A stretch of 64,000 bases of DNA, from positions 62,001 through 126,000 of the IMG/VR virus record IMGVR_UViG_3300045961_000282. One strand, 5' to 3'. The translations under genes were made by a program, and so were the position numbers. The notes under the pieces were generated by a model. It worked only from the letters and a program-made list of their open reading frames with translations, was not told where the DNA came from and did not search any database. Positions 24,868 to 60,517 of the stretch are shown here, in pieces (within the stretch, counting starts at the first letter, position 1; every line of letters begins with the position of its first letter).

Positions 24868-24874
24868 CGCTACA

Positions 24875-43960: not shown

Positions 43961-45183
43961 GCCCCGATCCCCATCTGCTCGCGGGCCCATTCGAGGTAGG
44001 CCTCAAGGCGCGCCTTGGGGTCCTCGACCAACGGCAGCGGCTCGGGCAGTCGCGCCGGGGACTCCTTGGTCACGACCTCGATGCTGTTGGAGTCGACCGT
44101 GCGCCGGTTGCCCTCGTCGTCCTCGATGACCAACTGGCCGTTCTCGATGCCCTTGACGTAGCCGAGGGCGCCGTCCTTGCTGCGCACCCGCGCACCCACC
44201 TTCGCGAACCGGCCGTGCCAGTCGCGCGGCTGGTTCGTGCTGTGGTGGTCAGAGGCTCGCTCTTTTGGGTCGGCATCAGCCGCGGGCTCGGCCCCTTCCT
44301 CGGCGACAGGAGCCGCGGCTGGCTCTCCTGCGGCGGCCAGTGTCATCCGCGTCGAGGCCATCTTCGCCATCGCGAGGCTGCGCTGGCGCACCAGTGCCGC
44401 CTTGGCCATCCGCTCCCGCGCCTCGGCTGCCTCGGCGCTGAAGTCGGTGGCGACCAGTTCGCTCAGCGAGGCGCCGTCGTGCACAACCTCGGCGAGGGCG
44501 TCGCGAACCATACTGGCTTCGAGTTCGTCGTCTTCATCGTCGTCGCCGTCGGGGCCATCGTCGCCCATCGCATCCTCAAGGGCGTCGGCCAACTTCTCTA
44601 CGGTCTCGTCGAGTTGGGTGGCAAGGCCCAGTGCGGTTTCGACGATCTCTTGGAGTTCCTCCGGCTCGTCATTCTCGGGCTCACTGTCGGGCATCTCCAT
44701 GGACTGGACCGACAGTTCGGCTGACCCCGTGACGTCGGGCTCCTCGGAGGTGGCCTGCGGGGCCTGCGGGGTTTCCCCGGCCATCTTGGTGAGGAAGTCG
44801 ATGATCGCGGTCGTTTCCTCGTCGGTGAACTCGAACAGTTCCTCGACGTCGATGTCGGCATCCTCGTCCACCGCCCCGTCGGGATCCTCGGCGGCAGCCA
44901 GCATCGCCACGCAGCGCTGCGCCCACTCCCGCCCGGCGTCCCCGCCATAGAGCCCCGCCTGCCCGGCCCGGTTGGGGTCGTAGCGCCAGTCTCCGGAGAA
45001 GAACCGCAGCATCTCCATCGGAACGCTCAGGTCCACCGGCATGGAGGAGTTGAGCACCTGTGCGACTGACACCGAGGGGGCGTCGCTGATCCCGAGGGCC
45101 TCACCCTGCCGCGCCTTGAGGGCGGCGTCGGCGCGCTGGGCCACCTTCTTGGGGACCCGCAGAGTCCGCTTCTTATTGCTCAT
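43957..45183 (-). CDS. Head-module protein (GGDAG..WA domain, acidic linker, RDxxGRF plus SH3-like domain)
   Basis: Start MSNKKRTL overlaps the upstream stop. LYGGDAGREWA; QPRDWHGRFAKVGARVR. Confidence 0.7.
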   Translation of the reverse strand: MSNKKRTLRVPKKVAQRADAALKARQGEALGISDAPSVSVAQVLNSSMPVDLSVPMEMLRFFSGDWRYDPNRAGQAGLYGGDAGREWAQRCVAMLAAAEDPDGAVDEDADIDVEELFEFTDEETTAIIDFLTKMAGETPQAPQATSEEPDVTGSAELSVQSMEMPDSEPENDEPEELQEIVETALGLATQLDETVEKLADALEDAMGDDGPDGDDDEDDELEASMVRDALAEVVHDGASLSELVATDFSAEAAEARERMAKAALVRQRSLAMAKMASTRMTLAAAGEPAAAPVAEEGAEPAADADPKERASDHHSTNQPRDWHGRFAKVGARVRSKDGALGYVKGIENGQLVIEDDEGNRRTVDSNSIEVVTKESPARLPEPLPLVEDPKARLEAYLEWAREQMGIGA

Positions 45184-45739: not shown

Positions 45740-46011
45740 CAGGACAGGCCCTCCCCGGAGACGTTGATGCCGCGGGCGGTCAGCATGGCCATGTAGGCAA
45801 GCCACTCCTCGCGGGACGCCGACACGATGTTGGCGTGCTCCTCGTAGTCGCTCTGCCGCTCGCCGGTCTCGTCATCGACCGACCCACCCGCTCGGTACTC
45901 GGCCGCGGCGATCGGATCGTAGCGATCGACGCCCTGATCCTTGAGCCACTGTGCCCACATGCTCTGCACCTCGGCAATTGTGGCCAGTTGCTCCTGACCG
46001 CTCGCGCTCAC
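45739..46011 (-). CDS. Small acidic protein, candidate immunity protein
   Basis: 90 aa, GTGA-coupled to the stop of the giant ORF. The immunity role is inferred from position only. Confidence 0.65.
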   Translation of the reverse strand: MSASGQEQLATIAEVQSMWAQWLKDQGVDRYDPIAAAEYRAGGSVDDETGERQSDYEEHANIVSASREEWLAYMAMLTARGINVSGEGLS

Positions 46012-49000
46012 ACCACACCTCCGCTCGCTCCGCCGCCCGCAGGGGCGCCCGCCTCAGGTACTGCGCCCTCGGGGACCTCACCCTCGGGGACTTGCGGAGC
46101 GGGGGCCGCGGGGGCTGCTGGCCCACTGCCCCCGCGCTGCGCCTCTGCCTTTCGACGCATGCGCTCCATCCTGCGCATCATCTTCTCGGTGTAGTAGTTC
46201 TCGACGAGGGTGTACAGCCGATCCCTGCGCAGGTTCTTGCGTCCCTGCCATGAATTGCCCAGCATGCCCTTCTTGCCCGCCCATGGCTGCCCAGATTCAT
46301 CGGCTGGGTCGTAGCCGATCTGAGACAACTCGAACGGGGTCGGGAAGTTCTCGTCGCTTGGCGAGGTGTTCTGCATGCGCTCTTGGATCGCGGCAAAGTC
46401 GGCACGGTCCTTGTCCGTCCTCAGGTGCCGTTGGATAGATGACATCAAGTACCGGGCCTGACCGAGAGGGTCTGACTTCCAGCCGAATCCTGCCGTTGCC
46501 CATGCATATCCACCGACTGAGATGTTTGCATGAACATCATAATGCTTGATGCCATTCAGAATGGACCAATCGGACGTCTGTTTCACCAATTGTCCAGCAA
46601 GTCCGGTGTTCTGAACGTCATTATCCATGATCATGTATGCGGCATAAATGCTGGTGTTTTGAACCGTGACGTAGCCGTTTCCGACTCGCGGCATGTCCCG
46701 CAGGACATTTTCGCGCTGCCGTTCAATTGCTTGCGCCAGTTCAGATGGTGAATCAGCATTGAGCGCTTGGCTGATCGCGTCATCACCGACCTTGGCTCGG
46801 CGCAGGGCGTCGGCGATGTCGGATGTTGAAGCAGCATCCATGTCAACGATCCATCGGCTCGCTTCAAGGATCTGTGGTGCGGTCAACTGCAACCCGGAAG
46901 ACCCGACTTGATGCAGTTCGGCCAGCGCCTTCTCGCCGTACGCCTTGCGCGCGGAGCCAAACGCATCAGACAACTTCTTCACATTTTGCCCGACCGCATT
47001 CCACAGATCTTCGATAGATGCGACGTTCCCATCGGAATCGAGAATCGTGGCCCCTCGCGCATAGGACCGCATCAATGAGAAGTCGAACGAGGAGGATCCA
47101 TCCCCTGCATAACTGCTCAGAGCCTTCTGCAATTCACGAAGTTGGTTGTAATTTCCAATCGAGAATCCCGTTTCACCGAGCGGTTTCGATTGGTCCGCTT
47201 CGCTGACGAATTCACGGAACTCGTAGTTGATGTTTCCGTTGCGATCCCGGATCGGGCTTGAGGTGACGACCATTGCCAGCGCCGGGGCACCGGGGCGATC
47301 GGATATCTGAGTCGCCTCAGCAACGGCCCGCAAGGCACGTGTCGAGTTGTCCGCGGTCATGTCATCGAGCCGCGTTGCGGCCCCTGCGCGCTCGAAATCG
47401 TGGCCCAGCGGGTTGAACTGAGCAACCAACTGCTGGATCTCGCGCTTCTTGATCTGCTCGGCGCGGCGGCTCATCACCGACGGGCCATTGAGTTCCCTGA
47501 CCGGGACCCACGAGCGCGACCGCAGGGCGGCGGCGCCGAGGTTGGTTCGGTTGACGCTGGCCAGTGACGCGATCTCGAACGGTGTCGGGAGCCCCTCGAG
47601 GTCGGTGGCATCCTCGAGGTCGCGAACCATATCCGCGATGATCGCCTGCGCCGCTTCGTCGTCGCCCGAATCCCGGGCCGCCCGCGCCAGCATGGCCCGC
47701 ACGATGTCCTTGGTGGAGTCAAAGCCACCCATGGCGATGACGTCCCAGTCGAAGCCCGAGTTCGCCGCCGTGAGCCGCGCCGACGGGGGTGCATCGACAA
47801 TCTGCAGCGACGTTGCGCCGTTGGCGATCGCGTGGCGCTCCGCCGCCTTCAGGGCCTCCTGTTGGGCAAGGCGCACCGACTGCGACGTTCCCGGATCGAT
47901 CCCGACCCTGACGGTCGGAGGAAGGTCGCCGCTGCGGTCGATCTGCAGGGTGAACTTGCCGCCATTTTCGGCGCGGCCTCGCGGCTGGAGGGTCACGGCG
48001 ATGCGCCCGCCGGTCGGGGTCAGTTCGATGCTGTCAATCGACTGAATCCCACGGAACTCGGGGTTGGACAGCAGGTCGGCGAACAACTGCTCGCGAACCG
48101 CGTCGGGGACCGAGGAATCGGCAAGATTGGCGATGGATGGCGCCGACTGCCCTATGTGCATGATCCGGGCCGCTTCGCCCGCCCCGTGGCGACTGCGCAG
48201 GGCGTCGGAGTCAGCGGGACTGAAGGAGGCATTGATCCCCGACGTCCCGAAGTAACGGACTGGGTCGGCGACCAACGGGCTGGACTGCGCCAGCGACAGA
48301 TCGTAACCGCGCTCCCGTCGCACCTCCCCGGTGCGCAGGTCGCGAACTGTCACATACCCCCACGAGGCAGCAGCGTTCGTCCCGGGCTCCGGTTCGGTGC
48401 CAAGAACCACGGCAGACTGGGCGCTTGAGCCATATCCCATCCTTACCGTGTCGCCGACGACCAGACCGTTTCCGCCCCCGTCCGTGACAACGCCATCGGT
48501 CCCGGAAGTTGGTCGACGAACCAGTTGTCCATCGGAATCGACCAAGGCATTGACCTGTGCCTGACGGACTCGCTCGACGTCCATCTCGTCCTGCAGGGTC
48601 CGCATCGCGAACAGCGCCTCGCGGCGTTGCTGCATGGGGGTTGCGGGATCCAAGGCGATGCGCTCGACGACCGCGAGCGCCTGCATGTTCACCTCATGGC
48701 GGGCCGCGTACAGCATCGTGGGTGATGAGAGGCCGTTGGCCGCCGAAATCCCTGTCCGATAGGCCCGCGCAGCGTCCGGATCAACGCTCTCCATGACCCC
48801 AGTGAGGTCGTCGCCATAGCGGTTGATCGCGATCTGCATCAGCGATGAGTTGGCAGCCACCAATCCCGGCGGGACCGTCTGGCCTCGCTCGCGCCGGGCG
48901 ACCATGAGGTTGCGCAGGATCCCATTCGCTCCGACGAGGTCTCCGCCATCGATGGCCCTGCTCGCGACCTGCAGCGCCGACCGCTCTGCCTCACTGACCC

Positions 49001-52000
49001 CATCAGACGCAGCCGCTTGGTCGATGGCCGCCTTCGCAGAATTCCGGCGCGATGTCGCCGAGTAGCCTGAGGGTTGCTGAACTTCCCCAATCCCCCCCAT
49101 CGCGTCGCGGATCGATGCGTAGGCCAAGTTGACCGCATCGGCACGATCTGGGTCATAGCCTTCAAACGAAGAGCCCAGACCGGCGTTGTTCAGCAACGCC
49201 GCGGACGCCCGCTCGAGTTGATCTCGCGCCGTGGCGGCATCGCCGTCGCGCAGAGCGGTCGCTGCGGACTGCAGGACCGTGGAAACGTCAGCATCGGCCG
49301 TGTCCGCGAAGACTGATTGAGCCAGTTCATCGATCTGGTCGGCCTTCTCGGTGAAATCAACCGGGGGTGCCTCGGGAGTCGTTGACTCAGGAACGGTCGC
49401 CTCAGGCTGCGGCTGGTTCGACCCAACCCGCATCCTGCTATCGATCCGGTCGCGCAGGCCGACCGCGACGGACCGCCGGTAGTCACCGTAGGCGAGCGAG
49501 TCGATCACGTCGGTCAGGATGTTGCGCGCGGTGGCTCCGTCGCCGTTGCGCAGCGCGTCCACGGCTCGCTGCCCCATCCTGCGCAGGTCGGCCGGAACGC
49601 CTTGGGCTTCGAGGATTCCGGTTGCCTCGGAGATGAGGTCGCTGTAATCCACCTGCGGCTGAGCCTCGGGAGCCTCGGGCTCGGGAGCCTCGGGAGCCTC
49701 GGGCGCCGTCGGCTCCTCGGGGGCCTCGGGGGCCTCTGGGGCCTCTGGGGCGGCTTCGGGCTCGGGGGCCGGGGGTTCCTCGGGGGTCGGCCTGTCCTGT
49801 GGCGCCTGTCCGCGGGACAGTTCCTCTCGAACCATACGGACGATGTCGGCATCACTGATGGCGCCGTCGACCGCGGGGTTCTCCCAAAGGCGCTCACCCG
49901 GGCGGATGTCAGCGCCGCTGTTGCGGAGGTCCTCGATCGACTCCGGGTCCATCTCATGCAGGACCCCGGCGCGCTCAAGGACGCGCAGGACGCGCTGAAC
50001 CTCGTCGTCGCTCCACTGCGGGAACATGCCCCGGATCTCCGTGAGATCCCAGTTGACGACGCCGTTCTGGCCAACGAGTGCATCGACCGCTTGGGCGACA
50101 TTGGAATCCACCGAAGCGATGTCAAGACCGACCGACTCGCTCTGTGCGTAGGCGCGCACAATCTGATCGGCGATCTCGGCGTCGGTGAGGTTGGCGGCGC
50201 CCGCCCCGTACCCGTACCGCGCCATGCTGTCGCCGATGTCGATCCGCGACAGGACTCCGGCGTCGACCAGTCGGTCCAGCATCCCTTGGGCGCGGGCCAT
50301 GTTCATGTTACCGTACGTCGCCACGAACTCCGGCGTGACCGCGAGGTAATCGCGCAGCGCGGCGGCGAACTGCTGGGCGCGGGCAATCTCGGCGCTGCCG
50401 GGTGCCGACACGGGCAGGCCCGGAACGCCGTCATTGGGATCGCGTCGGTCGGGCATGGCGTCGCGCACGTCACCGTTGGGATCCCACACGGCGAGGGCAT
50501 CGCGCAGTTCTGCATCGCGCGCGTCGCCCGCTTGGCGCAGCCGCCACAGGGCGGCGTCGAACATGATCCGCTGCTCCGCTGAACCGTCAGGGAGTTGCAG
50601 CGCCGCAGCCAGCGTGGCACGGGCGTTCTGGCGATGCCGGTGGGCGGTCGCCTTCGCCGGGTCGCGCGGGGACACCGACATGTTGGTCGGCAGGCCACCC
50701 ATGATGTTCGCCACGCGCGACCGGGTGTCGGCGGCGGCGGCGGCCCAGTCGTTGTCGCCCCAGTGGGAGTCGCGCAGGGCCATCATGCGCCGCACTGCGT
50801 CCGCATCGCCCGCCTGCGACAGCCGCGAGAGGCCGAGGGAGTAGAAGGCCTCGAACTCGCCGAACTGCCCCGCCCGGTAGGCGCGTCGGGCCAGCGCGAA
50901 GGAGTTGGCCGCCTTCCGCCGGGCGTCGGCCTCCTGCCCCTCGCCGAGTTCGGCCACGAGGGCCCGCTGGCGGGTGACCTCATCAGAGATCGAGGCGATC
51001 TCCGCGTCGGTCCACGAAGCCCCCCGGGCGGTCGGGCGGCTCGGGGCGAGGTTGTCGTCGGCCAACCGGAACGTCGGATCGTCAAGGTTGCGCAGCCGGT
51101 CGGGGTTGACCCGAACCCGCGCGGCGTTCATCAAGCCCCGCAACTCCGTAGCGTGCACGAGATCCAGCGCGTTGCGGGCGCGCATCAGGGCGGCCCAGCG
51201 CTTCGCCGAACCCGGCTCAGCGTTCAGCGCATCCCCGAATGCCTTCTTCGCGAAGATCAGGGCCGACCCCGCCTCGCTGCCGCGTCCCATGTAGCGGATC
51301 AGTGCTGCGATCGACCCGCTGATCGCCTCGTCGTCCATGTCCCATGAGGTGTCGCTCAGGGAACGGCCGTGAGCACGATGCCGGATGTCCAGCAACTCAT
51401 CGCGCAGTTGGGCCAGATCGGCATTGTCGCCGGAGCGGCTCGCGGCGCGGTTGAGGCGGTTGATGACCCGCTCCAGCACGGCTTCGCGATCGAAGTTGGT
51501 GGCCGGTCCGAGGTCGCCGCGCAGCAGCCGGTTCAGATCGCGCTGGGCGACGTTGATGGCCGCCTGCACCTGCTGGCTGGTCAGGAATCGGGGGTCGCCC
51601 GCCAGTCCGTTGAGCCGGTCGGCCACGGACTGCAGGCTGTCGACCGAGGATGAGTAGTCAGCCTCATCCATGTAGTCGTCCATGTACCAGTACCCGTCGG
51701 GATCACCCTCGGGGGTCTGGAGGATCCGGTTCCCGGACTCGATCCACTCGCTGGTCGCGTCGGCCTGCTCGCGGGTGTAGTTCTCGAGGCTAACCTGCGG
51801 GTAGTCGTCCAGATAGCGGTTGAGCAGGGCATCGGCCCGTGCTGACGCCTCAAGCAGGCTCACCCGATCGGCTGCGCTGAACGCACCGTTGGCCTCTTGG
51901 GTGAAATGCCGCGACGCGAAGAGCAGCCGGTTGGCGCGGCCACGGTTGGCCCGGCGCGTTCCCAGCGGCTCGGACAGATCACCGATGCTGTCGACCAGTT

Positions 52001-55000
52001 CCTGCCAGTAGCGCTGGACGTTGGGGCGCGCCCCGGACAGCGCCTCAGTGATGCCGGACAACTGATCCGCATAAGGCTGCTGCCGCCACCCTGCAGAGTC
52101 GGTGGCCCGCTCCGCCGAAACCTGCGCCTCCTGCGGGGTGACCGTCGGCGCGGCGTCGGGCTCGTCTCCCGCGTCGGCCATCTGCATCGCCTGCGCGTAG
52201 GCGTCCAGCGCCGCAGGATCGGCGTCCTGCCCTTGCGCGTTGGCCTCCAGCGCCGCGTTCGTCGCGGGGTCGTTGCGCACCGCCTCGGCCGCGTCGGCCT
52301 CGGAGAGGGCGGTTTCCACGTGGCGGGTGGTGGATTCGTCCATCCCCGCCTCGCGCGCCACCTGTGCAACAGACTCACGGGTCGGCTCGGGGGTACTGGC
52401 CTCTGGGGTCGCAGAAACAGCCCCTCGGGGCCCTTCGCCCAACAGCGCATCCGCATACTCGGCACTATCGCTGCCTGCGAGGTCGTTCAAGAACTCGTCG
52501 ACGTTGCCATCGTGCTCATCCATGAGGTTGCGCACGAGCGCATTGCGTTGCCGCTGCGTCAGCGAGTCCCACTGATCCACCGCGTCGCTGATTGCGCCTT
52601 CCGCGCGCAGGTTGATCGGATCTTCGTCCTCGATCGGCGCGACCTCTGCGGCGGGCGCCTGCTGCGCCCCGGTGCGTTCGCGCCGTCGCCGCTCCCGCTG
52701 CAGGTCGCGGCGGTCGCGATTGATCTGGCGCTGCCAGTCGCGTGCCGCTGCCCGGCGCTCGGCCCGGTACTGCCGCGCCGCCCGGCGCTCGGCGGCCAGC
52801 CGTCGGCGCTCGCGGGCCTTGGGCTGGTTGCGCCGGTCGATGCGCGTGCGCGGGTATCCGGCCTTGCGCAGCATGCTGCCGATCCGGCGGCTCTGTGCAC
52901 GGGCCTTGCGGGCGGCGTTGACCTCACCAAGCGCCTCGGCCTCGGCGGCCCAGTCGCTCAACGCCTGCTGCATGTCGGCCAGCGCCTGCGCTGCGGCATC
53001 CTCGTCGCCGTTGGCGAGGGCTTCGCTGTACCGACCGCGCGCGTCATCGAGCCGCGAAGTCGCTCCGCCCGAACGCTCCTCGATCTGCCGCTTCGTCTCC
53101 GCGAGGTACTCGGCGTCCTCGGCGAAGTCGAAGTTGTCGTTGGGGTTACGACCAACCGCCGGGTTCTCGCCCAGCGGCACCCGTGGCGGCCCGTTCTGCT
53201 CGGCCTGCTCCCGGGCAGCGGCAATGTCAGCCGCTTCTTCGAGGGTGTCCGCGGCGTCGTCGAGGGCCCCGGCGACGTTGTCGCTGTCCTGAGCCGCAAT
53301 GGCGCCGTCGTCCACAGCGTTGGCGGCGTCCGACAGGCTGTGGCTGTCGGCGTCGGGGCGGATCGAGCCGTCGTCGCTGACCACCGAGTTGATGGCATCG
53401 CGAGCCGCCTGAACCTCGGGACGCGCGGCAACCTCGGGCTCGGCCTCGACGGCGTCCTCGACGTTGAACAGCGCCATCTGGTTGAGGTCATCGGCTTCGG
53501 CGTCGAACTCGGTGTTCAGCCACGCCCCGCGCGCGTCGTCTTCCTCGGCATCGAAATCTGCGTCGTGCTGGCGCAGGAAGTCGGCCAACTCGGTCCGCAG
53601 CGGGCCCATATGGTTCCGAAGGCCACGCCACGCAGCGAAGTCGTCATCCTCGATGTCATCGAGGCGGGACATCATGCTGTCGATGGTTCCGACGGCTGCG
53701 CGGATGTTGCGGATCGTGTCGTCGCCACTTCCGGCGTCTGCTAGCGCGAGGAAGTCGCTGATCCGACGCATCCGCTCACGCAGGTAGTCATGCGTGAGTT
53801 CGTCGGGGAAGGCGTTGATGGCGTCGCCGATCAAGCCAACCCCGTTGGCCGCGTCGTCGATGTCGATCAGTTGCTCCATCAGGTCGCCCTGAGAAAGGCC
53901 CTGCCATGCACCCATCGCACCTTCGGCGGCCAGATCGGGAAGGACCTCCAGACCCGACTCCTCCAGCGCCTGCAGTTCCTCGTTGCTCAGGCCCTCGGGG
54001 GCGCCAGCGATGTCGACCAGATTCCCGTCGGCGTCATACTCGACCTCGATGCGATCGCCGGGGGACAGTTCGGTTCCGGGCCACTGGCTGGACCAGCCCA
54101 AGGGCACCTCGAAGTAGCGGCGGCCCGGGGCGGGGCGAGCCTCGGCCTCGGGGGCCTCGCCTGCCGTCACCTCTTCGTGGCTGACGATCCGCCCGTCGCG
54201 GCGGACCACCCGGAAGGTCCTGCCGCTTTCGGCTCCCCGGTACGGGTACACCGTGGTGATCTCGCCATCGGGGGTGCGCTGGGTTTCCAGCCACCCGCTG
54301 ATCTCCTCGCCGTCCGGGGTGCGGTAGTTCCCAGTCATTCCCTGAACTGGGCGCTGCTCTTCGGGGGCTTCGGGGATTTCGGCGCGCGGCTCCTCCTCGG
54401 GAATCTCGGCCCGCACCCCCTCGGGGGCCTCTTCATCGACCTCTTCAAGATCCGTCGACTCGAAGGTAGCCAGATCCAGCGTCCGTCGGGCACCGCGCTC
54501 GCGGGCCGCGGCCTCAGCCGCCTCGGGGGTGTCGTAGACGTCGACGATGTCGGCGACGACCTCTCCGGTGTCGGGGTCGACGACGAACGCGACATGCGCG
54601 CCGTTCTCGCCGCTCAACTCCTCCCAGTTGTCGTCGATGAACGTCGCCGCATTGGCCCGCTGGAACTCCGCGAACTGGAACCGCCGCTCATTGCCGCGGG
54701 CAACCGCGATGCCGGACTCGGGGAAAGCCCCCTCGGCGGGGTCGAACGCGACGCCCTGCCGCTCATCGAAGGCACGAATGACGTGCTCGACTGCATCGTT
54801 GGGAACCATATCCTCGTCGGCGTTGACCCGGAGGTGCCTGCGGTGCCGGTCGAGACGCTGGCGGAACTTGCGGTCGGTCTCCTCCTGCTTGGCCCGCTGG
54901 GCCTCAAGGTCGAACGGCTCGACGCCGCGCTCGATGCCGCCGTCGACCGCAGCCTTGAGGATGGCGACCATGTCCTCGACGTCGGTGTCGGCGTGGTGCT

Positions 55001-57938
55001 CGCCCGTGCGGTCGATGCCGTAGAACCGGCGCATCGTGTCCATCTTGTCGTTGCGCGGAACTCCCTCGCCCCGACCGCGCAGGTTCTCGCCATGGAGCGC
55101 GCGGAACACCGGAAGGGTGTCGAGGATGCCGCCCTCAGGCATCCAATCCTGTCCGCCGGTCACACCCAAGTCGCGCAAGCGCTGCCGGATCGGCTCAAGG
55201 TCGACCCCCTCGGACTCCCCTGCGCGAGACGGGTTCATCACCGCGTCGATCATGTCGCGCAGCATCGAGGTGTCGAAGGCGGCGTTCTGCGCCACCACCA
55301 TGTCGGGCCCGATGAACTCGACCATCTCGGGCAGGACTTCCTGCCACGGGCGTTCCTGCGATGCCTCCTCGTCGGTGATGCCGTGAACCTGCTGAGCGAA
55401 CGGGTTGCTCGGCTTCCCGGGGTTCATCCTGAAGACGCGGCGATCGACCTCTTCGCCGTTCTCGAAGCGGATCAGCGCAGCGGAGACGGGGCGGTCTGGA
55501 AGGTCCATGCCCTCGGCGTCGGCCTGCATCCGCTCGCCCGCAAGGCCAGTGGTCTCCAAGTCGAAGCCGACCAAGGATCCATTGTTGATCCGGTCACGCA
55601 GCGCTTCGAGCGAAACAGTCCCATCCTCGTTCTGAATGCCAGCGGCCCGTCCCTGCAGGGCGGGGAACGTGCGGCCGGGCAGGAAGGGCTCCTTCAACTT
55701 GCCACGGACGAACTGCTTGCTCGGCAGCCGCTCGCTGGCCCGCTTGCCAAGGATGCGGGCAGTCTCCACCAAACCCGCAGCGGCGTCGCTGACGTCAACC
55801 GCGAGCCTGCTGTCGTCGCCACCCGACAACCGACGGCGCAGGGCGGCCCGCTGCACGGCGGTGGCCGCGTTGGCAACATCCTTGGCCCACTTGCCGAGAT
55901 CGCTCTCGCGCGCCTCGCTGTCGGCGTCGACTGCGCGCAGGGCGGCCACGGCGTCGGCTGCGTCGGGGTTGTCGGCCACGAACCCGTCGAGCAGCCCGTC
56001 GAGGTTGTCGTAGGCCATGTCGAAGTTGCGCCGCGCCGGGGCGGTGATGTTCTCTAGCCGCTTGTGCATGTCGCGGCTGTCGCGCGCGAACGTCTCCACC
56101 ATGCCTGCGCGCTCTTGAACGCCTGCCGCAACGTCGCGGCGGGCACGATCCTCAGCGGAAACTAGCGCACTGGGCTGCCCGTCGATCTCCGCGATGCGCC
56201 GCTCGGCGGCCTTGCGGGCCCGGTTTGCGGCCAGAGCGGCGCGGTCGAAGACCGTGCTGCGCATCGCCAGCGGCTCGATCTCACCGGACTCGATGTTGCG
56301 CGCCATTGCCTCAAGGGCATTGACATCCTCGGGGCCCAGCGCGTCGACAGTGTCCGGGTCGGTGATCAGCGCCCGGGCGTCGGCGACAGCGTCGTCCGAA
56401 CCATACGGCGAGGTCTCGGGGGCGGCCTCCGGCTCCGACTCGGGAATCTCCGCGACGACCTCGGGCTCGGGGGCTACTTCACCGGCATCCCCGACGCCCT
56501 CAGCGCCTCGGTCACCCTCTGCAGAAACTGCTCCTTCGTCTCCCCCGGGTTCGGCTTCATCAGCACCGGCTGGGGCTGCGCCTTCGGGGCCTTCTCCTCG
56601 TCCACCTTCTTCTCCCTCTGGTTGTGGCTCGGGGGCCGCCGGGGCCTCGGCTTCGGGGGCTTCCTGCGGCTCGGTCGTGGCCCGCTGCTCCGGGCGCGTG
56701 AATGCCCGGATCGTATCCTCGCGGCCACCTGATCCGGCGGCCACGCCGATCTCGTCGATGCGCTCCTGAATGTCCGCAGGCTGGTCCTCGCGGGCGTCGC
56801 GCAGAGCGCGGCGCAGGTTCTCGCGGCGGTCGTCGCCGGGGTCGTTGAGCAGGCCGACGATGGCGTCAGCGACCTTGTTGCGCTGGTCGAAGTCGGGATC
56901 AACGGGGGCGAGGCTGCGGAACAGATCCACCGCCTGTTGCGCCAGCGCGTCATCCCCTTCCTCGGTGGGGATGTCCATCCGGTCGGCGACCTCGCGCAAC
57001 TGGCGGCCGAGGTCGCGGCCCTGCGCGAAGGCGAAGTTCCCGCGCTCGAAGTCATCGGCGATGCGTCGCAGGTTGTCGGCCGCGAACGGATCGACGATCC
57101 CGTCCGCGTTCCTCGCGATGGCCTTGTCGGCGATCTGCAGTGCCCGGGCGAAGCGGTCCTTCTGTCCTGCCGGGGCCATCCGCTGGCGCCGCTTGGCGCC
57201 CTCCATCAGGCGGTTGAGTTCCCGCACCTGCTGCTGCCCGAGCGGCTCGCCGCGCGCGCCCGATCCGTCCCATTTCTCGTAGTCCCCGCCGATCAGGTCC
57301 TCGGGGTCGTTCTCGCCGAGGGCCTCGGCATCATTCGGGTTGTCCGGCAGTTGGGCCCGCCCGCCCGCCTTGGTCCCGGGGTCGGAAACGATCTCCAACT
57401 GGTCCGGGGACAGGCGCACAAACCGCGTCTCGCCGGGCTGCAGGTCATCGGGAACCCCGATTCCCATGCTCTCGATGTCGTCGTTGGTCGGATCACCGCC
57501 GCGCCCGAGATCATTTACTCGGGTGCTGATTTCAACAACAACGTCTTCATTGTTGTTCAATGCGCCCGCAATTCGCCCGTAGGCAACCGCGTCGCGACCA
57601 TCGGGGCGCTTGAAGACGGAGACGATCTGGAACGTCGCCTCTTCCTCGCCGTTCTCGTTGCGCACCCAGTTGGGCTGCTTGCGCCGCCGCGGGCCGATGT
57701 ACTTGAGGAACCGGCCCTTGCGGTCACGCAGCCAGTAGATCTCCTTGAAGTCCGCAATCAGCGCAAGGACCGCGCCGGGCAACGCCCCGCGGCCGACGAA
57801 CTGGGAATCCGTCCCGTAGAAATCGAGGATGTCGAACTCGGTCGCCAGCGGCGGCAGGCCGATCTCCTTCCGTGCCGCGTTGGTGCTTGCGACCATCGAA
57901 TCGAAGCCGAAAACCGGCGAGCGGTCGTCAGAGTGCAC
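46008..57938 (-). CDS. Giant polyvalent head-associated protein (DEDDh 3'-5' exonuclease, wHTH pair, SH3-like, two GNAT-like domains)
   Basis: 3976 aa open frame, GTG start after AGGAG. FDLETTG...HGIT...VAQNAAFD...LDTL...HHADTD (DnaQ-like, ~54950-55590); VQNTGLAG...HANISVGGYAWATAGF (GNAT-like, ~46230-46680). Confidence 0.85.
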   Translation of the reverse strand: MHSDDRSPVFGFDSMVASTNAARKEIGLPPLATEFDILDFYGTDSQFVGRGALPGAVLALIADFKEIYWLRDRKGRFLKYIGPRRRKQPNWVRNENGEEEATFQIVSVFKRPDGRDAVAYGRIAGALNNNEDVVVEISTRVNDLGRGGDPTNDDIESMGIGVPDDLQPGETRFVRLSPDQLEIVSDPGTKAGGRAQLPDNPNDAEALGENDPEDLIGGDYEKWDGSGARGEPLGQQQVRELNRLMEGAKRRQRMAPAGQKDRFARALQIADKAIARNADGIVDPFAADNLRRIADDFERGNFAFAQGRDLGRQLREVADRMDIPTEEGDDALAQQAVDLFRSLAPVDPDFDQRNKVADAIVGLLNDPGDDRRENLRRALRDAREDQPADIQERIDEIGVAAGSGGREDTIRAFTRPEQRATTEPQEAPEAEAPAAPEPQPEGEEGGRGEGPEGAAPAGADEAEPGGDEGAVSAEGDRGAEGVGDAGEVAPEPEVVAEIPESEPEAAPETSPYGSDDAVADARALITDPDTVDALGPEDVNALEAMARNIESGEIEPLAMRSTVFDRAALAANRARKAAERRIAEIDGQPSALVSAEDRARRDVAAGVQERAGMVETFARDSRDMHKRLENITAPARRNFDMAYDNLDGLLDGFVADNPDAADAVAALRAVDADSEARESDLGKWAKDVANAATAVQRAALRRRLSGGDDSRLAVDVSDAAAGLVETARILGKRASERLPSKQFVRGKLKEPFLPGRTFPALQGRAAGIQNEDGTVSLEALRDRINNGSLVGFDLETTGLAGERMQADAEGMDLPDRPVSAALIRFENGEEVDRRVFRMNPGKPSNPFAQQVHGITDEEASQERPWQEVLPEMVEFIGPDMVVAQNAAFDTSMLRDMIDAVMNPSRAGESEGVDLEPIRQRLRDLGVTGGQDWMPEGGILDTLPVFRALHGENLRGRGEGVPRNDKMDTMRRFYGIDRTGEHHADTDVEDMVAILKAAVDGGIERGVEPFDLEAQRAKQEETDRKFRQRLDRHRRHLRVNADEDMVPNDAVEHVIRAFDERQGVAFDPAEGAFPESGIAVARGNERRFQFAEFQRANAATFIDDNWEELSGENGAHVAFVVDPDTGEVVADIVDVYDTPEAAEAAARERGARRTLDLATFESTDLEEVDEEAPEGVRAEIPEEEPRAEIPEAPEEQRPVQGMTGNYRTPDGEEISGWLETQRTPDGEITTVYPYRGAESGRTFRVVRRDGRIVSHEEVTAGEAPEAEARPAPGRRYFEVPLGWSSQWPGTELSPGDRIEVEYDADGNLVDIAGAPEGLSNEELQALEESGLEVLPDLAAEGAMGAWQGLSQGDLMEQLIDIDDAANGVGLIGDAINAFPDELTHDYLRERMRRISDFLALADAGSGDDTIRNIRAAVGTIDSMMSRLDDIEDDDFAAWRGLRNHMGPLRTELADFLRQHDADFDAEEDDARGAWLNTEFDAEADDLNQMALFNVEDAVEAEPEVAARPEVQAARDAINSVVSDDGSIRPDADSHSLSDAANAVDDGAIAAQDSDNVAGALDDAADTLEEAADIAAAREQAEQNGPPRVPLGENPAVGRNPNDNFDFAEDAEYLAETKRQIEERSGGATSRLDDARGRYSEALANGDEDAAAQALADMQQALSDWAAEAEALGEVNAARKARAQSRRIGSMLRKAGYPRTRIDRRNQPKARERRRLAAERRAARQYRAERRAAARDWQRQINRDRRDLQRERRRRERTGAQQAPAAEVAPIEDEDPINLRAEGAISDAVDQWDSLTQRQRNALVRNLMDEHDGNVDEFLNDLAGSDSAEYADALLGEGPRGAVSATPEASTPEPTRESVAQVAREAGMDESTTRHVETALSEADAAEAVRNDPATNAALEANAQGQDADPAALDAYAQAMQMADAGDEPDAAPTVTPQEAQVSAERATDSAGWRQQPYADQLSGITEALSGARPNVQRYWQELVDSIGDLSEPLGTRRANRGRANRLLFASRHFTQEANGAFSAADRVSLLEASARADALLNRYLDDYPQVSLENYTREQADATSEWIESGNRILQTPEGDPDGYWYMDDYMDEADYSSSVDSLQSVADRLNGLAGDPRFLTSQQVQAAINVAQRDLNRLLRGDLGPATNFDREAVLERVINRLNRAASRSGDNADLAQLRDELLDIRHRAHGRSLSDTSWDMDDEAISGSIAALIRYMGRGSEAGSALIFAKKAFGDALNAEPGSAKRWAALMRARNALDLVHATELRGLMNAARVRVNPDRLRNLDDPTFRLADDNLAPSRPTARGASWTDAEIASISDEVTRQRALVAELGEGQEADARRKAANSFALARRAYRAGQFGEFEAFYSLGLSRLSQAGDADAVRRMMALRDSHWGDNDWAAAAADTRSRVANIMGGLPTNMSVSPRDPAKATAHRHRQNARATLAAALQLPDGSAEQRIMFDAALWRLRQAGDARDAELRDALAVWDPNGDVRDAMPDRRDPNDGVPGLPVSAPGSAEIARAQQFAAALRDYLAVTPEFVATYGNMNMARAQGMLDRLVDAGVLSRIDIGDSMARYGYGAGAANLTDAEIADQIVRAYAQSESVGLDIASVDSNVAQAVDALVGQNGVVNWDLTEIRGMFPQWSDDEVQRVLRVLERAGVLHEMDPESIEDLRNSGADIRPGERLWENPAVDGAISDADIVRMVREELSRGQAPQDRPTPEEPPAPEPEAAPEAPEAPEAPEEPTAPEAPEAPEPEAPEAQPQVDYSDLISEATGILEAQGVPADLRRMGQRAVDALRNGDGATARNILTDVIDSLAYGDYRRSVAVGLRDRIDSRMRVGSNQPQPEATVPESTTPEAPPVDFTEKADQIDELAQSVFADTADADVSTVLQSAATALRDGDAATARDQLERASAALLNNAGLGSSFEGYDPDRADAVNLAYASIRDAMGGIGEVQQPSGYSATSRRNSAKAAIDQAAASDGVSEAERSALQVASRAIDGGDLVGANGILRNLMVARRERGQTVPPGLVAANSSLMQIAINRYGDDLTGVMESVDPDAARAYRTGISAANGLSSPTMLYAARHEVNMQALAVVERIALDPATPMQQRREALFAMRTLQDEMDVERVRQAQVNALVDSDGQLVRRPTSGTDGVVTDGGGNGLVVGDTVRMGYGSSAQSAVVLGTEPEPGTNAAASWGYVTVRDLRTGEVRRERGYDLSLAQSSPLVADPVRYFGTSGINASFSPADSDALRSRHGAGEAARIMHIGQSAPSIANLADSSVPDAVREQLFADLLSNPEFRGIQSIDSIELTPTGGRIAVTLQPRGRAENGGKFTLQIDRSGDLPPTVRVGIDPGTSQSVRLAQQEALKAAERHAIANGATSLQIVDAPPSARLTAANSGFDWDVIAMGGFDSTKDIVRAMLARAARDSGDDEAAQAIIADMVRDLEDATDLEGLPTPFEIASLASVNRTNLGAAALRSRSWVPVRELNGPSVMSRRAEQIKKREIQQLVAQFNPLGHDFERAGAATRLDDMTADNSTRALRAVAEATQISDRPGAPALAMVVTSSPIRDRNGNINYEFREFVSEADQSKPLGETGFSIGNYNQLRELQKALSSYAGDGSSSFDFSLMRSYARGATILDSDGNVASIEDLWNAVGQNVKKLSDAFGSARKAYGEKALAELHQVGSSGLQLTAPQILEASRWIVDMDAASTSDIADALRRAKVGDDAISQALNADSPSELAQAIERQRENVLRDMPRVGNGYVTVQNTSIYAAYMIMDNDVQNTGLAGQLVKQTSDWSILNGIKHYDVHANISVGGYAWATAGFGWKSDPLGQARYLMSSIQRHLRTDKDRADFAAIQERMQNTSPSDENFPTPFELSQIGYDPADESGQPWAGKKGMLGNSWQGRKNLRRDRLYTLVENYYTEKMMRRMERMRRKAEAQRGGSGPAAPAAPAPQVPEGEVPEGAVPEAGAPAGGGASGGVV
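56474..56605 (-). CDS. Nested 43-aa gene in the +1 frame of the giant gene
   Basis: AGGGAG-N6-GTG start; MDEEKAPKAQPQPVLMKPNPGETKEQFLQRVTEALRASGMPVK then TAG. Host-frame codons become A/T-ending over exactly this interval. Confidence 0.65.
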   Translation of the reverse strand: MDEEKAPKAQPQPVLMKPNPGETKEQFLQRVTEALRASGMPVK

Positions 57939-58473
57939 CAGACTCTCCTGTCGTACCGTTGCTGTTCGTCATGCCGTCACGCTGTGCTTCACAGATGTTT
58001 GAGAGTAATGCGTCGAACTGATCCGCCGAAGGCATTTCCGCGATCCCCTGCTCGGCGTCAAAGCGACGCACCATCGAATCCGCCCACCGCTTGCCCGGGT
58101 CGCCGCCCCAAAGCAGCCACGCCACGTAGCCCGGGGTCTCCGAGCCCTTCTTGGCCCAGTCGGGTTTGCGGTCCACCGCGTGCCGGGCGAAGTACGCATG
58201 CATCTTCCGTATGGTTTCCCGACTACATGACTGCCCCGCAGCCAACTGCTTGCCGCGCGCCCGGCCGACGTCGGTCAGGTTCTTTCCGCCGCGGCCCTCC
58301 TTGAGCAGGTCGAGGCCGCGCTGCGCAGCCTTCTGCACGTCCTTCGGCGGGGCGTAGGTGTCGCTGGCCGCCGCCGTGATGGGCGCTACGGCTGCCAGTG
58401 GGGCGCCGATCTTGGCCATCATCCGCCGCCGCAGGTCGTCGCTGCCGATCTGGTAGCCGGTCTGGCTGGTCAT
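57928..58473 (-). CDS. Head-associated protein (WLLWGGDPGxxWA family)
   Basis: ATGA-coupled to the portal. PPKDVQKAAQRGL...VGRARGKQLA...TIRKMHAYFARH...VAWLLWGGDPGKRWA. Confidence 0.75.
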   Translation of the reverse strand: MTSQTGYQIGSDDLRRRMMAKIGAPLAAVAPITAAASDTYAPPKDVQKAAQRGLDLLKEGRGGKNLTDVGRARGKQLAAGQSCSRETIRKMHAYFARHAVDRKPDWAKKGSETPGYVAWLLWGGDPGKRWADSMVRRFDAEQGIAEMPSADQFDALLSNICEAQRDGMTNSNGTTGESGAL

Positions 58474-60215
58474 CGAACCCTCCGCAAACCATACTCATCG
58501 GGCATCGGGATCGATGTGTCCGTCGGGATCCTCTTGCGCAGTTGCTCCGGCTGCTGCGGTGGCGCCTCTTCCTCAGGAACCTCCTCCGGCTCCGGCGCGG
58601 CGGGGCCCTGCCCAACCTCCGGCAGCGGCAGGCCCTCAAGGACTTCCGGTGGCAGCGGGGCGGCCCCTTCGCCCGGGGCGGGCATCTGGCCGGTCTCCAG
58701 CAGGCTCTGCAGGTTCTCCGGCATCGGCGTCTTGGCCCCGGCGATGTTCTGCTCGCGTACCTCGCCCAGCAGGTCGGGGGCGATCCGCTGGTAGACCGAC
58801 TCGGCGAACTCGCCTGCGATCTGTCCGCGGCTGACGGTGATGCGCTTGATCAACTCATCGCCGCTGGGGGCGTCGGTCTCGGCAAAGCCGTGCGCCGAGC
58901 GCCACGCGCTGCCGGACAACAGGTAGCGATCCCATCCATCGGAGGCGCTCTGTGCCCGGTCGGCCGAGGTGAGGATGTCCGACGGGTCGTACCAGACGAC
59001 GATCTTCTCGGCAATGTCCGGGTCAACGCCCTTGGCAATCAGGGCGGGCCGCATGAACATTGCAGTCAGGGCGTCGCAGAGCAGCAACGTCATGGGCTCG
59101 ATGTGCCCGCGGTACATGGTCTGGTTGATCTGCACCGCGTTGCTGTACTTGACGTTGGCCAAGCCGGTCACGACGTCCTTGGGCACATCGACGCCCTGCA
59201 GGATCCGCTCCAGAACCCGGTCGGCGCGCTCAGCCAGCGCAGCATCGAAGGACCGCTCGAAACTGAAGTGCCTGATCTGGGAACCCAACTCACCGGGGCC
59301 GCGGATGAGCAGCGGAACCACGGCGCTGGCCGATTCCTCGTCGGCGATGGGAGTCGTCATCGCGGCCATCAGTTCGGCTTCGAAGGAGTCGGCATCCTCC
59401 TCGAAGGAGCCGTCCTCGTTGACCACATCCGGCGCGGCGGCGACACTCAGGCCGTCTGGGACGAACAGTGCGCCCGCGTTGAGCCGCGATTTCGCCGTGG
59501 CCCGCACGGTGCGGTTGAGCAGCAGCAGTTCCTCACACAGTTGCAGCAGGGCCCGCATCGAGGAGTCGGCCTCGTCGTGGAACCGCGCGTGGGGCCGCCA
59601 GATCCGTCCCACGAACGCGCTGGACTCCAGCGGCTTGATTCCTTGGGTGCCCATCGAGCGAGCGGTCTGGACCGAGATCTTCCCGTTGTTGTCGACCTGC
59701 ACCTCGTCGATCGACCGGATCGTCCACTTCTCTGGAACCGTTCCATCAATGGAGGGCAACTGCTGGACCAGATAGCACTCGCCTGCGACCGAGAGGTTGA
59801 TGGAGGCGTCGGCGATCATCCCGGGGATGCCGCCGTGGCAGGACTGCAGTCGGTTGAGTTGGTTGTGCGCGAGGGCGACGACGTCCTCGTCGAGCGCAGG
59901 TACGTCCGACAGCGTCGACGGGGGATCGGAGGGCTCAGCGACGTAGGCGACATGAAGCCGCATTCGCGACATCAGGGCCGCGACCAGCATGAAGGCGTAC
60001 TTGATCTCCCCGATGCTGTCGTAATACTCCCACGCCTCGGACTGCCACGCCGACGTGGCGCCCTTGCGCTTCTTCAACTGCTCCAGTTCGCCGCGATCGG
60101 TGATCTTCATCCGCGCGGCGGCGGCGACCAACGGGCGGGGGGCGTTGAAGGGCAATGCCTCGGCGCGCTCGACCCCGGCGGGCAGGGGCTCGGGGGCCCT
60201 GCTGAAGACGCCCAT
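58470..60215 (-). CDS. Portal protein
   Basis: TGATG-coupled MGVFSRA. AWQSEAWEYYDSIGEIKYA, NLSVAGECYL, RIWRPH.R...EADS, SRLNAG and SASAVVP motifs of actinophage portals. Confidence 0.9.
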   Translation of the reverse strand: MGVFSRAPEPLPAGVERAEALPFNAPRPLVAAAARMKITDRGELEQLKKRKGATSAWQSEAWEYYDSIGEIKYAFMLVAALMSRMRLHVAYVAEPSDPPSTLSDVPALDEDVVALAHNQLNRLQSCHGGIPGMIADASINLSVAGECYLVQQLPSIDGTVPEKWTIRSIDEVQVDNNGKISVQTARSMGTQGIKPLESSAFVGRIWRPHARFHDEADSSMRALLQLCEELLLLNRTVRATAKSRLNAGALFVPDGLSVAAAPDVVNEDGSFEEDADSFEAELMAAMTTPIADEESASAVVPLLIRGPGELGSQIRHFSFERSFDAALAERADRVLERILQGVDVPKDVVTGLANVKYSNAVQINQTMYRGHIEPMTLLLCDALTAMFMRPALIAKGVDPDIAEKIVVWYDPSDILTSADRAQSASDGWDRYLLSGSAWRSAHGFAETDAPSGDELIKRITVSRGQIAGEFAESVYQRIAPDLLGEVREQNIAGAKTPMPENLQSLLETGQMPAPGEGAAPLPPEVLEGLPLPEVGQGPAAPEPEEVPEEEAPPQQPEQLRKRIPTDTSIPMPDEYGLRRVR

Positions 60216-60517
60216 CAGAGCCTCGTCGAGATCATGCCGGTCACTGCTGAGGCTGTGAGCATTCGTGCCACCGGCTCCCATGTCGTTGGCGAGACCCGCC
60301 GGGCGACGACGACGGCCGCTCCGGCCCAGATGCTCACGCACCACGGGCAGGTGAACAGGTATCCGATCTTGCTGTCGGCAGGATCGTGCCTGTCCCACAC
60401 CCAGTCGCGCACGGGTGCAGCGATCTCGTCCTCGATCAGAAGGCGGGTCAGTCGATATGTCGCTAAGGCGTCCACGACCAACGCAAGGCCGCTGCCACCA
60501 GAGTTGAGGGTACCCAC
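60215..60517 (-). CDS. DUF1360-like membrane protein
   Basis: LATYRLTRLL.ED.I..PVR...YLFTCPWCVSIW. Confidence 0.75.
   Translation of the reverse strand: MGTLNSGGSGLALVVDALATYRLTRLLIEDEIAAPVRDWVWDRHDPADSKIGYLFTCPWCVSIWAGAAVVVARRVSPTTWEPVARMLTASAVTGMISTRL

What the first reader, a model, noticed from the sequence alone, without database searches (positions are those of the whole stretch)
56474..56620. Hidden 43-aa gene nested out of frame inside the 3976-aa giant gene
Seen: a purine-rich RBS (AGAGGGAGAAGAAG), GTG at 56605 and TAG at 56474 define MDEEKAPKAQPQPVLMKPNPGETKEQFLQRVTEALRASGMPVK in the +1 frame. Over the same interval the giant frame is a featureless G/E/A linker, and 27 of its 44 codons end in A/T, whereas the flanking codons are almost all G/C-ending. 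The nested frame has 42 of 43 G/C-ending codons and encodes an amphipathic helix (ETKEQFLQRVTEALRA). This is the pattern expected when the second frame is the constrained one. Inference: an internal immunity, chaperone or regulatory peptide engulfed by a polyvalent protein through gene fusion across it. Standard gene callers would miss it.
Basis: partly seen in the sequence, partly recalled or inferred. Interest (0 to 1): 0.8.

Follow-up and report, generated by a model that had tools for sequence, protein, structure and literature searches.

The report
Small gene nested in giant phage gene
A 43-codon reading frame hidden out of frame inside the flexible linker of a 3976-residue phage virion protein is probably a real, separately translated small gene, because a distantly related phage has the same arrangement at the same spot. 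Its translation and function are untested.

Summary
At 56474-56605 (-), the giant gene's own frame drops to 17 of 44 G/C-ending codons. Its protein sequence predicts 33.1 +/- 2.8 (z -5.7). The +1 frame holds a GAGGGAG ribosome-binding site, a 6-nt spacer, GTG, 43 codons and TAG.

The window is the structural module of a 206-kb metagenomic phage. The giant gene lies just after the portal gene.

Only one informative relative exists (L002; portal 64-75% identical). It has the same anomaly right after the same conserved N-terminal module (28 of 63 codons, z -5.3), with a +1 ORF that has a ribosome-binding site, a start and a stop. In both phages the A/T-ending zone ends at the +1 stop codon.

Best reading (about 0.55): an overprinted small gene, translated from an internal start, encoding a Pro/Lys/Glu-rich arm plus an amphipathic helix.

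Weaknesses:
- There are no free-standing homologues.
- The two peptides are not significantly alike.
- The 42-of-43 G/C-ending count is largely a by-product of the linker's GNN codons.
- There are no expression data.

The main rival is a position-conserved rare-codon pause cluster at a domain boundary. The proposed immunity, chaperone or regulatory role has no evidence.

The parts
46008..57938 (-). Giant ORF (3976 aa, GTG start). It is a virion-module polyvalent-type protein. The only recognised domain is a DEDDh/RNase_T exonuclease at aa 790-991 (window 54966-55571).
   Evidence: It lies directly downstream of the portal gene (58470-60398) and a small gene (57928-58473). JGI and Logan call it as one gene.
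56739..57938 (-). Conserved N-terminal module of the giant protein (aa 1 to about 400): a beta-rich core followed by a helical bundle. It is the only part shared with P0001 and P0002.
   Evidence: The AlphaFold model has mean pLDDT 60.8 and no PDB fold match.
56475..56627 (-). Zone of A/T-ending frame-0 codons (33 of 51) inside a Pro/Glu/Ala linker. The best change-point segment is gene index 1311-1464.
   Evidence: It starts 22 nt before the GTG and ends at the +1 TAG.
56612..56618 (-). Shine-Dalgarno-like GAGGGAG, 6 nt (AAGAAG) upstream of the GTG.
   Evidence: Duplex energy with the anti-SD is -8.5 kcal/mol, within the range of this phage's real genes. Only 7 of 314 internal ATG/GTG sites in the giant gene reach this value.
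56474..56605 (-). Nested +1-frame ORF: GTG, 43 codons, then TAG at 56476-56474.
56492..56536 (-). Amphipathic helix of the nested peptide (residues 24-38). Residues 1-23 form a Pro/Lys/Glu/Gln-rich arm.
   Evidence: AlphaFold single-sequence model: helix at 24-38, pLDDT about 84-94 there. The hydrophobic moment exceeds permutations of synonymous codons, P 0.0006-0.01.

Best explanation
An overprinted small gene.

Proposed mechanism:
- The late structural mRNA is read right to left on the window. Ribosomes translating the giant protein read this stretch in frame 0 as an acidic Gly/Glu/Ala linker. This linker joins the conserved N-terminal module to the variable cargo domains.
- Other ribosomes bind the internal GAGGGAG site, start at GTG 56605 in the +1 frame and stop at TAG 56474-56476.
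- The product is a 43-residue protein with a Pro/Lys/Glu-rich arm and a 15-20-residue amphipathic C-terminal helix.
- Both frames are constrained. The peptide fixes the frame-0 third positions (A/T, because they are its second codon positions). The linker fixes the peptide's third positions as G.

Shown: the anomaly, its sharp limits, and its recurrence in a related phage.

Inferred: translation itself, and a role as a small partner made together with the giant virion protein (assembly or packaging helper, or regulator). The function is unknown.
For: 1. The synonymous-site anomaly is confined to the ORF. Window: GC3 17 of 44 against 33.1 +/- 2.8 (z -5.7). L002: 28 of 63 against 46.1 +/- 3.4 (z -5.3). 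All four flanks are normal.
2. L002 is a syntenic relative: portal 64-75% identical, protease/scaffold 68%, giant N-module 49%. Synonymous sites between the two are presumably saturated at this divergence (inference), yet the signal sits just after the same N-module in both.
3. That zone holds the strongest A/T-ending cluster in each giant gene (21 of 30 and 20 of 30; other clusters reach 15-17 of 30). In L002, +1 beats frame 0 by up to 10 bits there, with only one other trivial spot (3 bits) in 4433 windows.
4. Change-points of the A/T-ending zone end at the +1 stop in both phages. Window: index 1464, the last base of TAG. L002: index 1935, against TGA at 1924-1926. The zones begin at or just before a +1 start with a ribosome-binding site: window GTG 1333; L002 TTG 1633 or GTG 1735, at -8.1 and -8.3 kcal/mol.
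5. This phage's genes use GGAGG-type sites, and such a site before an internal start is rare in the giant gene (7 of 314).
6. The order of the synonymous codons yields a Pro-free amphipathic helix more often than permutation does (P 0.0006-0.01). AlphaFold gives a confident helix at residues 24-38.
7. The sequence is reproduced by a second assembler.
Against: - There are no expression data. No RNA run was identified (no RNA-specific search was run), and the source DNA run is kept only as contigs.
- No homologue of either peptide was found as a free-standing protein or in any family library. The language-model 'recognition' score is low.
- The window and L002 peptides differ in length (43 against 63-97 aa) and are not significantly similar (P 0.19). 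Purifying selection on the peptide sequence is therefore not shown.
- Given the frame-0 protein, the +1 frame would be open anyway (P 0.85-0.87), and its codon likelihood is only z 1.8 and 2.6 above null.
- Purine-rich Glu/Gly codons generate SD-like strings and GTG easily.
- The third family member (L003) has A/T-ending clusters at poly-Pro linkers without any plausible +1 peptide.
- The comparison rests on two genomes only.
Confidence: 0.55

Rival explanations
1. A position-conserved cluster of rare (A/T-ending) codons plus SD-like purine strings at the boundary between the N-terminal module and the cargo. It would slow ribosomes so that the first domain of a 3976-residue protein can fold or dock. 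The +1 ORF would be an untranslated by-product.
For: - The robust signal is rare synonymous codons in frame 0, at the same domain boundary in two homologues.
- Position-specific conservation of rare-codon clusters is documented (PMC5438181, found).
- The +1 openness and G-ending codons follow from the linker composition.
- L003 has A/T-ending linker clusters with no credible +1 peptide.
- The two +1 peptides are not significantly alike.
Against: - It does not predict that the cluster ends at a +1 stop codon in both phages. By my own rough estimate from the +1 stop rate of the flanks (about 2.6% per codon), the joint chance is about 0.01.
- It does not predict that the cluster begins at a +1 start with a ribosome-binding site.
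- It does not predict that codon order should give an amphipathic, Pro-free helix.
- The other Pro/Glu/Ala linkers of the window's giant gene, including both immediate flanks, use normal codons.
Confidence: 0.22
2. Programmed +1 (or -2) ribosomal frameshifting. A fraction of ribosomes leave frame 0 at the start of the zone and terminate at TAG. This would give a short isoform of about 485 residues (N-module plus helix tail) beside the full-length giant protein.
For: - The +1 frame is open far upstream, so a fusion product is possible.
- The zone lies exactly at the end of the conserved module, and paired long and short products are common in phage structural genes (general knowledge).
- An SD-like element can stimulate +1 shifting, as in prfB (general knowledge).
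Against: - By inspection, there is no shift-prone site: no in-frame stop, no CCC_U or CUU_U type codon, and no motif shared by the window and L002 other than the GTG context.
- There is no downstream structure. The fold z-score is +1.27 and there is no Rfam match.
- The +1 coding signal starts at a start codon with a ribosome-binding site in both phages.
Confidence: 0.06
3. A relic of out-of-frame remodelling. The helix segment was once in frame in the giant protein. Two compensating 1-nt indels (an extra G in GAGGGAG, a lost G at AAG-TAG) moved it out of frame, and the +1 signal is an unerased footprint.
For: - Removing and adding one G would give a natural-looking continuous linker-helix-linker (inspection; change-point boundaries).
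- Such remodelling is documented in bacteria (PMC8788219, found).
- Weakly similar in-frame motifs exist elsewhere: window giant aa about 2753 (E 0.37) and P0002 aa about 175-200.
Against: - The same out-of-frame state exists in L002, which is diverged enough that an untranslated footprint should have decayed (inference). The alternative would be two independent recent double indels at the same spot.
- The G excess at +1 third positions shows that frame 0 has also adapted.
- The P0002 motif is not at the homologous position.
Confidence: 0.07
4. A compositional coincidence in a low-complexity linker with no function at any level.
For: - Alternative frames are often open in a 66% G+C genome.
- There are only two genomes to compare, and the boundaries were chosen after seeing the data.
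Against: - z is -5.7 and -5.3 against the synonymous null, with normal flanks.
- The zone holds the strongest A/T-ending cluster in both giant genes, at the same junction.
- There is no tandem repeat, and the segment's G+C content equals that of the genome.
Confidence: 0.08

Closest known systems
Lambda Rz1 inside Rz (embedded spanin gene)
   Same: A small (about 60 aa), proline-rich ORF lies wholly inside the +1 frame of a longer phage gene, with its own ribosome-binding site and start. Standard gene callers miss it.
   Different: Rz1 is an outer-membrane lipoprotein with a signal peptide and a lipobox Cys, and it sits in a lysis cassette. The nested peptide here has no Cys, no hydrophobic leader and no lysis context. 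Its host gene is a giant virion-module protein, and the overlap lies in an inter-domain linker.
Overprinted genes of small phages (phiX174 E in D, K in A/C; MS2 L)
   Same: Two frames of one stretch both encode protein. The newer or less constrained frame is low-complexity and disordered, and codon usage is asymmetric between the frames.
   Different: Those occur in tiny genomes under strong size constraint and are experimentally proven. This one is in a 206-kb phage with no size pressure and is unproven.
Position-conserved rare-codon clusters at domain boundaries (PMC5438181)
   Same: A cluster of rare synonymous codons sits at the same position in homologues, after a domain.
   Different: Here the cluster is bounded by a start and a stop codon of another frame in both homologues.
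Programmed frameshift pairs in phage structural genes (tail chaperone G/GT, T7 10A/10B, Listeria phage PSA +1 shifts); E. coli prfB and dnaX
   Same: Two frames are used in one late gene, and an SD-like element lies near the frame switch.
   Different: No slippery or hungry-codon site and no stimulatory structure were found. The alternative-frame signal begins at a start codon.
Polyvalent proteins of phages and conjugative elements (Iyer et al. 2017, PMC5512222)
   Same: The host gene is a giant multi-domain protein encoded beside the portal gene. By analogy it is probably packaged and injected. Relatives carry other enzyme domains (kinase-like, GNAT).
   Different: That paper's text has no occurrence of 'overlapping' or 'linker'. 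Only one catalogued domain (DEDDh exonuclease) is detectable here.

Membership tests
Embedded out-of-frame phage gene (Rz1 type) | ORF wholly inside another gene, in a different frame of the same strand | tested here: met
   56474-56605 (-) lies in the +1 frame of 46008-57938 (-).
Embedded out-of-frame phage gene (Rz1 type) | Own ribosome-binding site and start codon | tested here: met
   GAGGGAG, 6 nt, GTG, at -8.5 kcal/mol. This is rare among internal starts. L002 has equivalents. In silico only.
Embedded out-of-frame phage gene (Rz1 type) | Signal peptide with lipobox Cys; lysis-cassette context | tested here: not met
   The peptide has no Cys and no hydrophobic leader. The neighbours are portal, protease/scaffold and capsid genes. 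It is not a spanin.
Overlapping (dual-coding) gene in general | Reduced freedom at synonymous sites of the host frame, confined to the overlap and conserved in relatives | tested here: met
   z -5.7 and -5.3 with normal flanks, at the same junction in two phages. n = 2.
Overlapping (dual-coding) gene in general | Purifying selection on, or homology of, the second product | tested here: inconclusive
   The two peptides are not significantly similar (P 0.19). No homologues were found elsewhere. There are too few sequences for dN/dS.
Overlapping (dual-coding) gene in general | Translation of the second frame | not testable with these tools
   No RNA or ribosome-profiling data were identified. The only run found is the DNA source, kept as contigs.
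Programmed +1 ribosomal frameshift | Shift-prone site (P-site codon able to re-pair in +1, followed by a stop or hungry codon), conserved in relatives | tested here: not met
   Inspection of both loci found none.
Programmed +1 ribosomal frameshift | Stimulatory RNA structure or correctly spaced SD | tested here: not met
   The fold z-score is +1.27 and there is no Rfam match. The SD spacing fits initiation at the GTG.
Conserved rare-codon pause cluster | Cluster of rare synonymous codons at a homologous position | tested here: met
   This feature is shared with the overlap hypothesis and does not discriminate between them.
Out-of-frame remodelled segment (compensated frameshift) | A relative carries the segment in the host frame at the same position | tested here: not met
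   L002 has it out of frame too. The P0002 look-alike motif aligns elsewhere.
Polyvalent protein (host gene) | Several unrelated effector domains in one polypeptide, encoded with the portal/terminase packaging genes | tested here: inconclusive
   The portal-adjacent context is met. Only one known domain was found. Relatives carry kinase-like and GNAT domains.
Immunity protein or antitoxin | Homology to a known immunity or antitoxin family, or an adjacent toxin domain | tested here: not met
   The peptide has no Pfam, NCBIfam, PADLOC or PHROG hit. No toxin domain was recognised in the giant protein.

The most novel reading that the evidence does not exclude
The inter-domain linker of an injected giant phage protein is a conserved dual-coding module. 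It houses an independently translated micro-protein, made in fixed linkage with the giant protein, that acts as its dedicated partner (for example a packaging or unfolding helper, or a timer of cargo activity). The linker frame would have arisen by fusion of two genes across an older small gene. This would be a class of 'linker-embedded' genes not described for polyvalent proteins.
Probability: 0.15. Interest if true: 0.7.

Novelty: new member of a known kind. Interest (0 to 1): 0.45.

Why it matters
If translated, this is an overlapping gene in a large double-stranded DNA phage, where genome compaction cannot be the reason. It would sit in the linker of a giant virion protein of the kind thought to be injected with the DNA.

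Two consequences would follow:
- Low-complexity linkers of giant phage proteins can hide genes that annotation pipelines discard by design.
- The unknown giant protein would gain a candidate partner that could be used in pull-down experiments.

It is also a clean test case for separating two explanations of conserved synonymous-site anomalies, a second reading frame or a translational pause. Both make opposite and easily tested predictions here.

If it is not translated, it is a good example of a position-conserved rare-codon cluster at a domain boundary.

Tried and rejected
- **DNA similarity.** The region has no match in the phage or plasmid collections. tblastn of the peptide and of the N-module against phages found nothing.
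- **Word-indexed protein searches.** Nothing was found for the giant N-terminus, the window peptide or the L002 peptide.
- **Exhaustive phmmer.** The first 780 residues found only two relatives among 1.84 billion representatives. Both are single-member clusters.
- **Locus searches.** The N-domain profile found only the window's own contig in the viral collection and nothing in the metagenome (two scans) or genome collections. A search with a later conserved giant segment found only itself.
- **Portal relatives.** 79 further phages with a portal about 49-55% identical were fetched. None has the N-module, and none passed the G+C and ORF-length filters of my frame scan, so they added nothing.
- **ESM Atlas, Pfam, NCBIfam, PADLOC and PHROGs on the peptides.** No usable hit.
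- **Fold of the N-module.** The model has modest confidence and no PDB match.
- **Paralogue of the peptide in the window.** None was significant.
- **Assembly error.** Unlikely: a second assembler reproduces the stretch.
- **Tandem-repeat origin.** Rejected.
- **Antisense gene.** The antisense frame scores lower than +1.
- **Internal promoter or RNA element.** None was found.
- **P0002 in-frame look-alike motif.** It was first taken as a sign of an ancestral in-frame segment. It was dropped because it aligns after the beta-core, not at the linker.

Full report
**What is there.** On the minus strand, GAGGGAG (56618-56612) is followed by AAGAAG, GTG (56605-56603), 42 further codons and TAG (56476-56474). 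The frame is +1 relative to the 3976-codon ORF 46008-57938. Over this span the giant frame reads a Gly/Glu/Ala/Asp linker in which 27 of 44 codons end in A/T. The flanks have 31 of 44 and 39 of 44 G/C-ending codons. The +1 frame has 42 of 43 G/C-ending codons. The +1 frame is part of a 193-codon open stretch, but upstream of about 56630 it translates to Arg/Pro/Ser junk.

**Is it more than chance?** I held the giant protein sequence fixed and redrew synonymous codons from the phage's own usage.
- The expected G/C-ending count is 33.1 +/- 2.8. The observed 17 was never reached in 5000 draws (z -5.7), and both flanks are normal.
- In 12,992 sliding windows over 13 long ORFs, this is the only place where the +1 frame clearly out-scores the annotated frame other than at ORF 5' ends. 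It does so by up to 27.5 bits. One other internal spot reaches only 1.6 bits, and the remaining cases are over-extended ORF 5' ends.
- A second assembler's 32-kb contig from the probable source run matches 55500-57900 without a difference. There is no tandem repeat, and the segment's G+C content equals the genome's.

The +1 third positions are 86% G, against 37% genome-wide, because they are the first bases of GNN codons. For the same reason the +1 frame would stay open in 87% of randomisations, and its codon likelihood is only z 1.8 above that null. The informative signal is the A/T excess at frame-0 third positions, which are the second positions of the +1 codons.

**Context.** The window comes from a 206-kb IMG/VR contig from a freshwater-sediment sample. 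It holds a tailed-phage structural module:
- portal, 58470-60398;
- a small gene, 57928-58473;
- the giant gene;
- a 588-aa gene;
- a protein combining a 2H phosphoesterase domain with a protease/virion-protein region, 40131-44006;
- major head protein, 37824-39821;
- tail fibre, tape-measure protein and distal tail protein.

The giant protein has one recognisable domain, a DEDDh exonuclease at aa 790-991. Its position beside the portal gene matches that described for phage polyvalent proteins, which are thought to be packaged and injected (PMC5512222).

**Relatives.** An exhaustive search with the first 780 residues found only two proteins.
- P0001 (3137 aa, locus L002) shares the N-terminal module: 49% identity over aa 47-229 and 31% over aa 249-395. 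It lies in a syntenic phage, with portal 64-75% identical and protease/scaffold 68% identical.
- P0002 (1759 aa, L003) shares only the beta-core.
- All other searches for relatives returned nothing or only the window's own contig.

**The key comparison.** In L002, just after the end of the same N-module, the giant frame again loses its codon bias.
- The nested span has 28 of 63 G/C-ending codons against 46.1 +/- 3.4 expected (z -5.3), with normal flanks.
- The +1 frame out-scores frame 0 there by up to 10 bits. Only one other spot in 4433 windows does so, by 3 bits.
- The +1 frame carries a purine-rich ribosome-binding site, GTG at gene index 1735, 63 codons and TGA at 1924. An alternative start, TTG at 1633, also has a ribosome-binding site.
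- Change-point fitting of A/T-ending codons gives segments 1311-1464 in the window and 1632-1935 in L002. The window's 3' edge is the last base of the +1 TAG. The L002 edge lies three codons past the +1 TGA. Each 5' edge sits at or just upstream of a +1 start with a ribosome-binding site.
- This zone is the strongest A/T-ending cluster in both giant genes: 21 of 30 and 20 of 30, against 15-17 of 30 elsewhere, and the weaker clusters mostly carry stops in the other frames.

At this divergence an untranslated footprint would not be expected to persist, so something constrains these sites in both lineages.

**Start signal and peptide.**
- The phage's genes use GGAGG-type sites with spacers of about 5-8 nt.
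- In the giant gene, only 7 of 314 internal ATG/GTG sites have an equally good site, and the nested GTG is one of them.
- I permuted the observed synonymous codons among equal amino acids, which keeps the giant protein and its rare-codon content unchanged. A Pro-free amphipathic stretch as strong as the real one appeared in only 0.06-1% of trials for the window. For L002 the test was not significant (P 0.06-0.59).
- AlphaFold predicts a confident helix at residues 24-38, preceded by an extended Pro/Lys/Glu arm.

**What argues against a real gene.**
- The two peptides differ in length and are not significantly similar (P 0.19).
- Neither has a homologue in any library.
- L003 has A/T-ending clusters at poly-Pro linkers whose +1 translation is clearly junk.
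- Purine-rich Glu/Gly codons readily create SD-like strings.
- The comparison rests on two genomes, and there are no expression data.

**Explanations.**
1. *Nested gene.* The best-supported reading is a small gene translated from its own start, with both frames co-adapted (about 0.55).
2. *Rare-codon pause cluster.* The main rival is a position-conserved rare-codon and SD-like pause cluster at the domain boundary (about 0.22; PMC5438181). It explains the core signal. It does not explain why the cluster is bounded by a start and a stop of another frame in both phages.
3. *Frameshifting.* Programmed +1 frameshifting is unlikely (about 0.06). There is no shift site, the RNA is less structured than shuffled controls (z +1.27), and Rfam finds nothing.
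4. *Frameshift relic.* A relic of compensating frameshifts (about 0.07; PMC8788219) would need independent recent events in both lineages. It also conflicts with the G excess, which shows that the linker frame has adapted.
5. *Coincidence.* Pure coincidence is given about 0.08.

**Origin and function.** The +1 frame has the more gene-like codon usage, and the giant frame is low-complexity. By the usual criterion for overlapping pairs, this suggests the small ORF is the older frame. The zone also lies at the junction between the conserved module and cargo that differs between the two phages. No evidence bears on an immunity, chaperone or regulatory role.

**Comparison with known systems.** The nearest analogue is lambda Rz1 inside Rz. 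It too is small, proline-rich, in the +1 frame and fully embedded, with its own start. The defining lipoprotein signal and lysis context are absent here, so the resemblance is in gene architecture only.

**Verdict.** This is a credible but unproven new example of an overprinted phage gene, in an unusual place. It is of moderate interest and can be tested cheaply with a +1-frame reporter and a frame-0-synonymous start knockout.

Noticed in passing
L002:103-2805 (portal), residues about 361-709: The portal protein of the related phage carries an insertion of about 350 residues that is absent from the window's portal. By eye it resembles an intein with a homing-endonuclease core, but Pfam gave no hit.
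   Followed up: partly
window 40131-44006 (-): A 1291-codon ORF combines a 2H phosphoesterase (2'-5' RNA ligase superfamily) domain at aa 200-303 with a region at aa 504-943 that matches PHROG families annotated portal protein, head maturation protease and virion structural protein. Its first 90 or so codons look like an over-extension into the upstream gene.
   Followed up: partly
window 18529-24951 (-): The tape-measure protein (2140 aa) ends in an M23-type peptidase/endolysin-like domain (aa about 1947-2037). It also has an A/T-ending codon cluster (21 of 30) over a hydrophobic stretch at gene index 2610-2802, where the other frames contain stops.
   Followed up: partly
L003:2411-7690, gene index 1326-1482 and 4476-4587: The distant family member has A/T-ending clusters at poly-Pro linkers (runs of CCA). 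Their +1 translation is His/Arg-rich junk. This shows that linkers in this family can carry unusual codons without a credible second gene.
   Followed up: partly
window 57928-58473 (-): The 181-aa gene between the portal and giant genes overlaps the giant start by 11 nt. It matches phrog_2859 and, weakly, LPD11 (E 0.086). Homologous stretches lie mostly about 5-8 kb from the portal gene in nine other IMG/VR phages, possibly as part of larger proteins.
   Followed up: partly
window 49593-49682 (-), giant protein aa about 2753: An in-frame Pro/Glu linker followed by a short helix ending in Gly-Val-Pro weakly resembles the nested peptide (E 0.37 within the window). This is probably chance.
   Followed up: no
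window 49527-49805 (-), giant protein aa 2712-2804: A stretch of the giant protein gives a weak, far sub-threshold match to an IgA Fc-binding protein model (24.8 bits; cutoff 1700). It is probably a low-complexity repeat region.
   Followed up: no
window 28656-31352 (-): A collagen-like repeat tail-fibre protein (898 aa) matches dozens of tail-fibre PHROG families.
   Followed up: no
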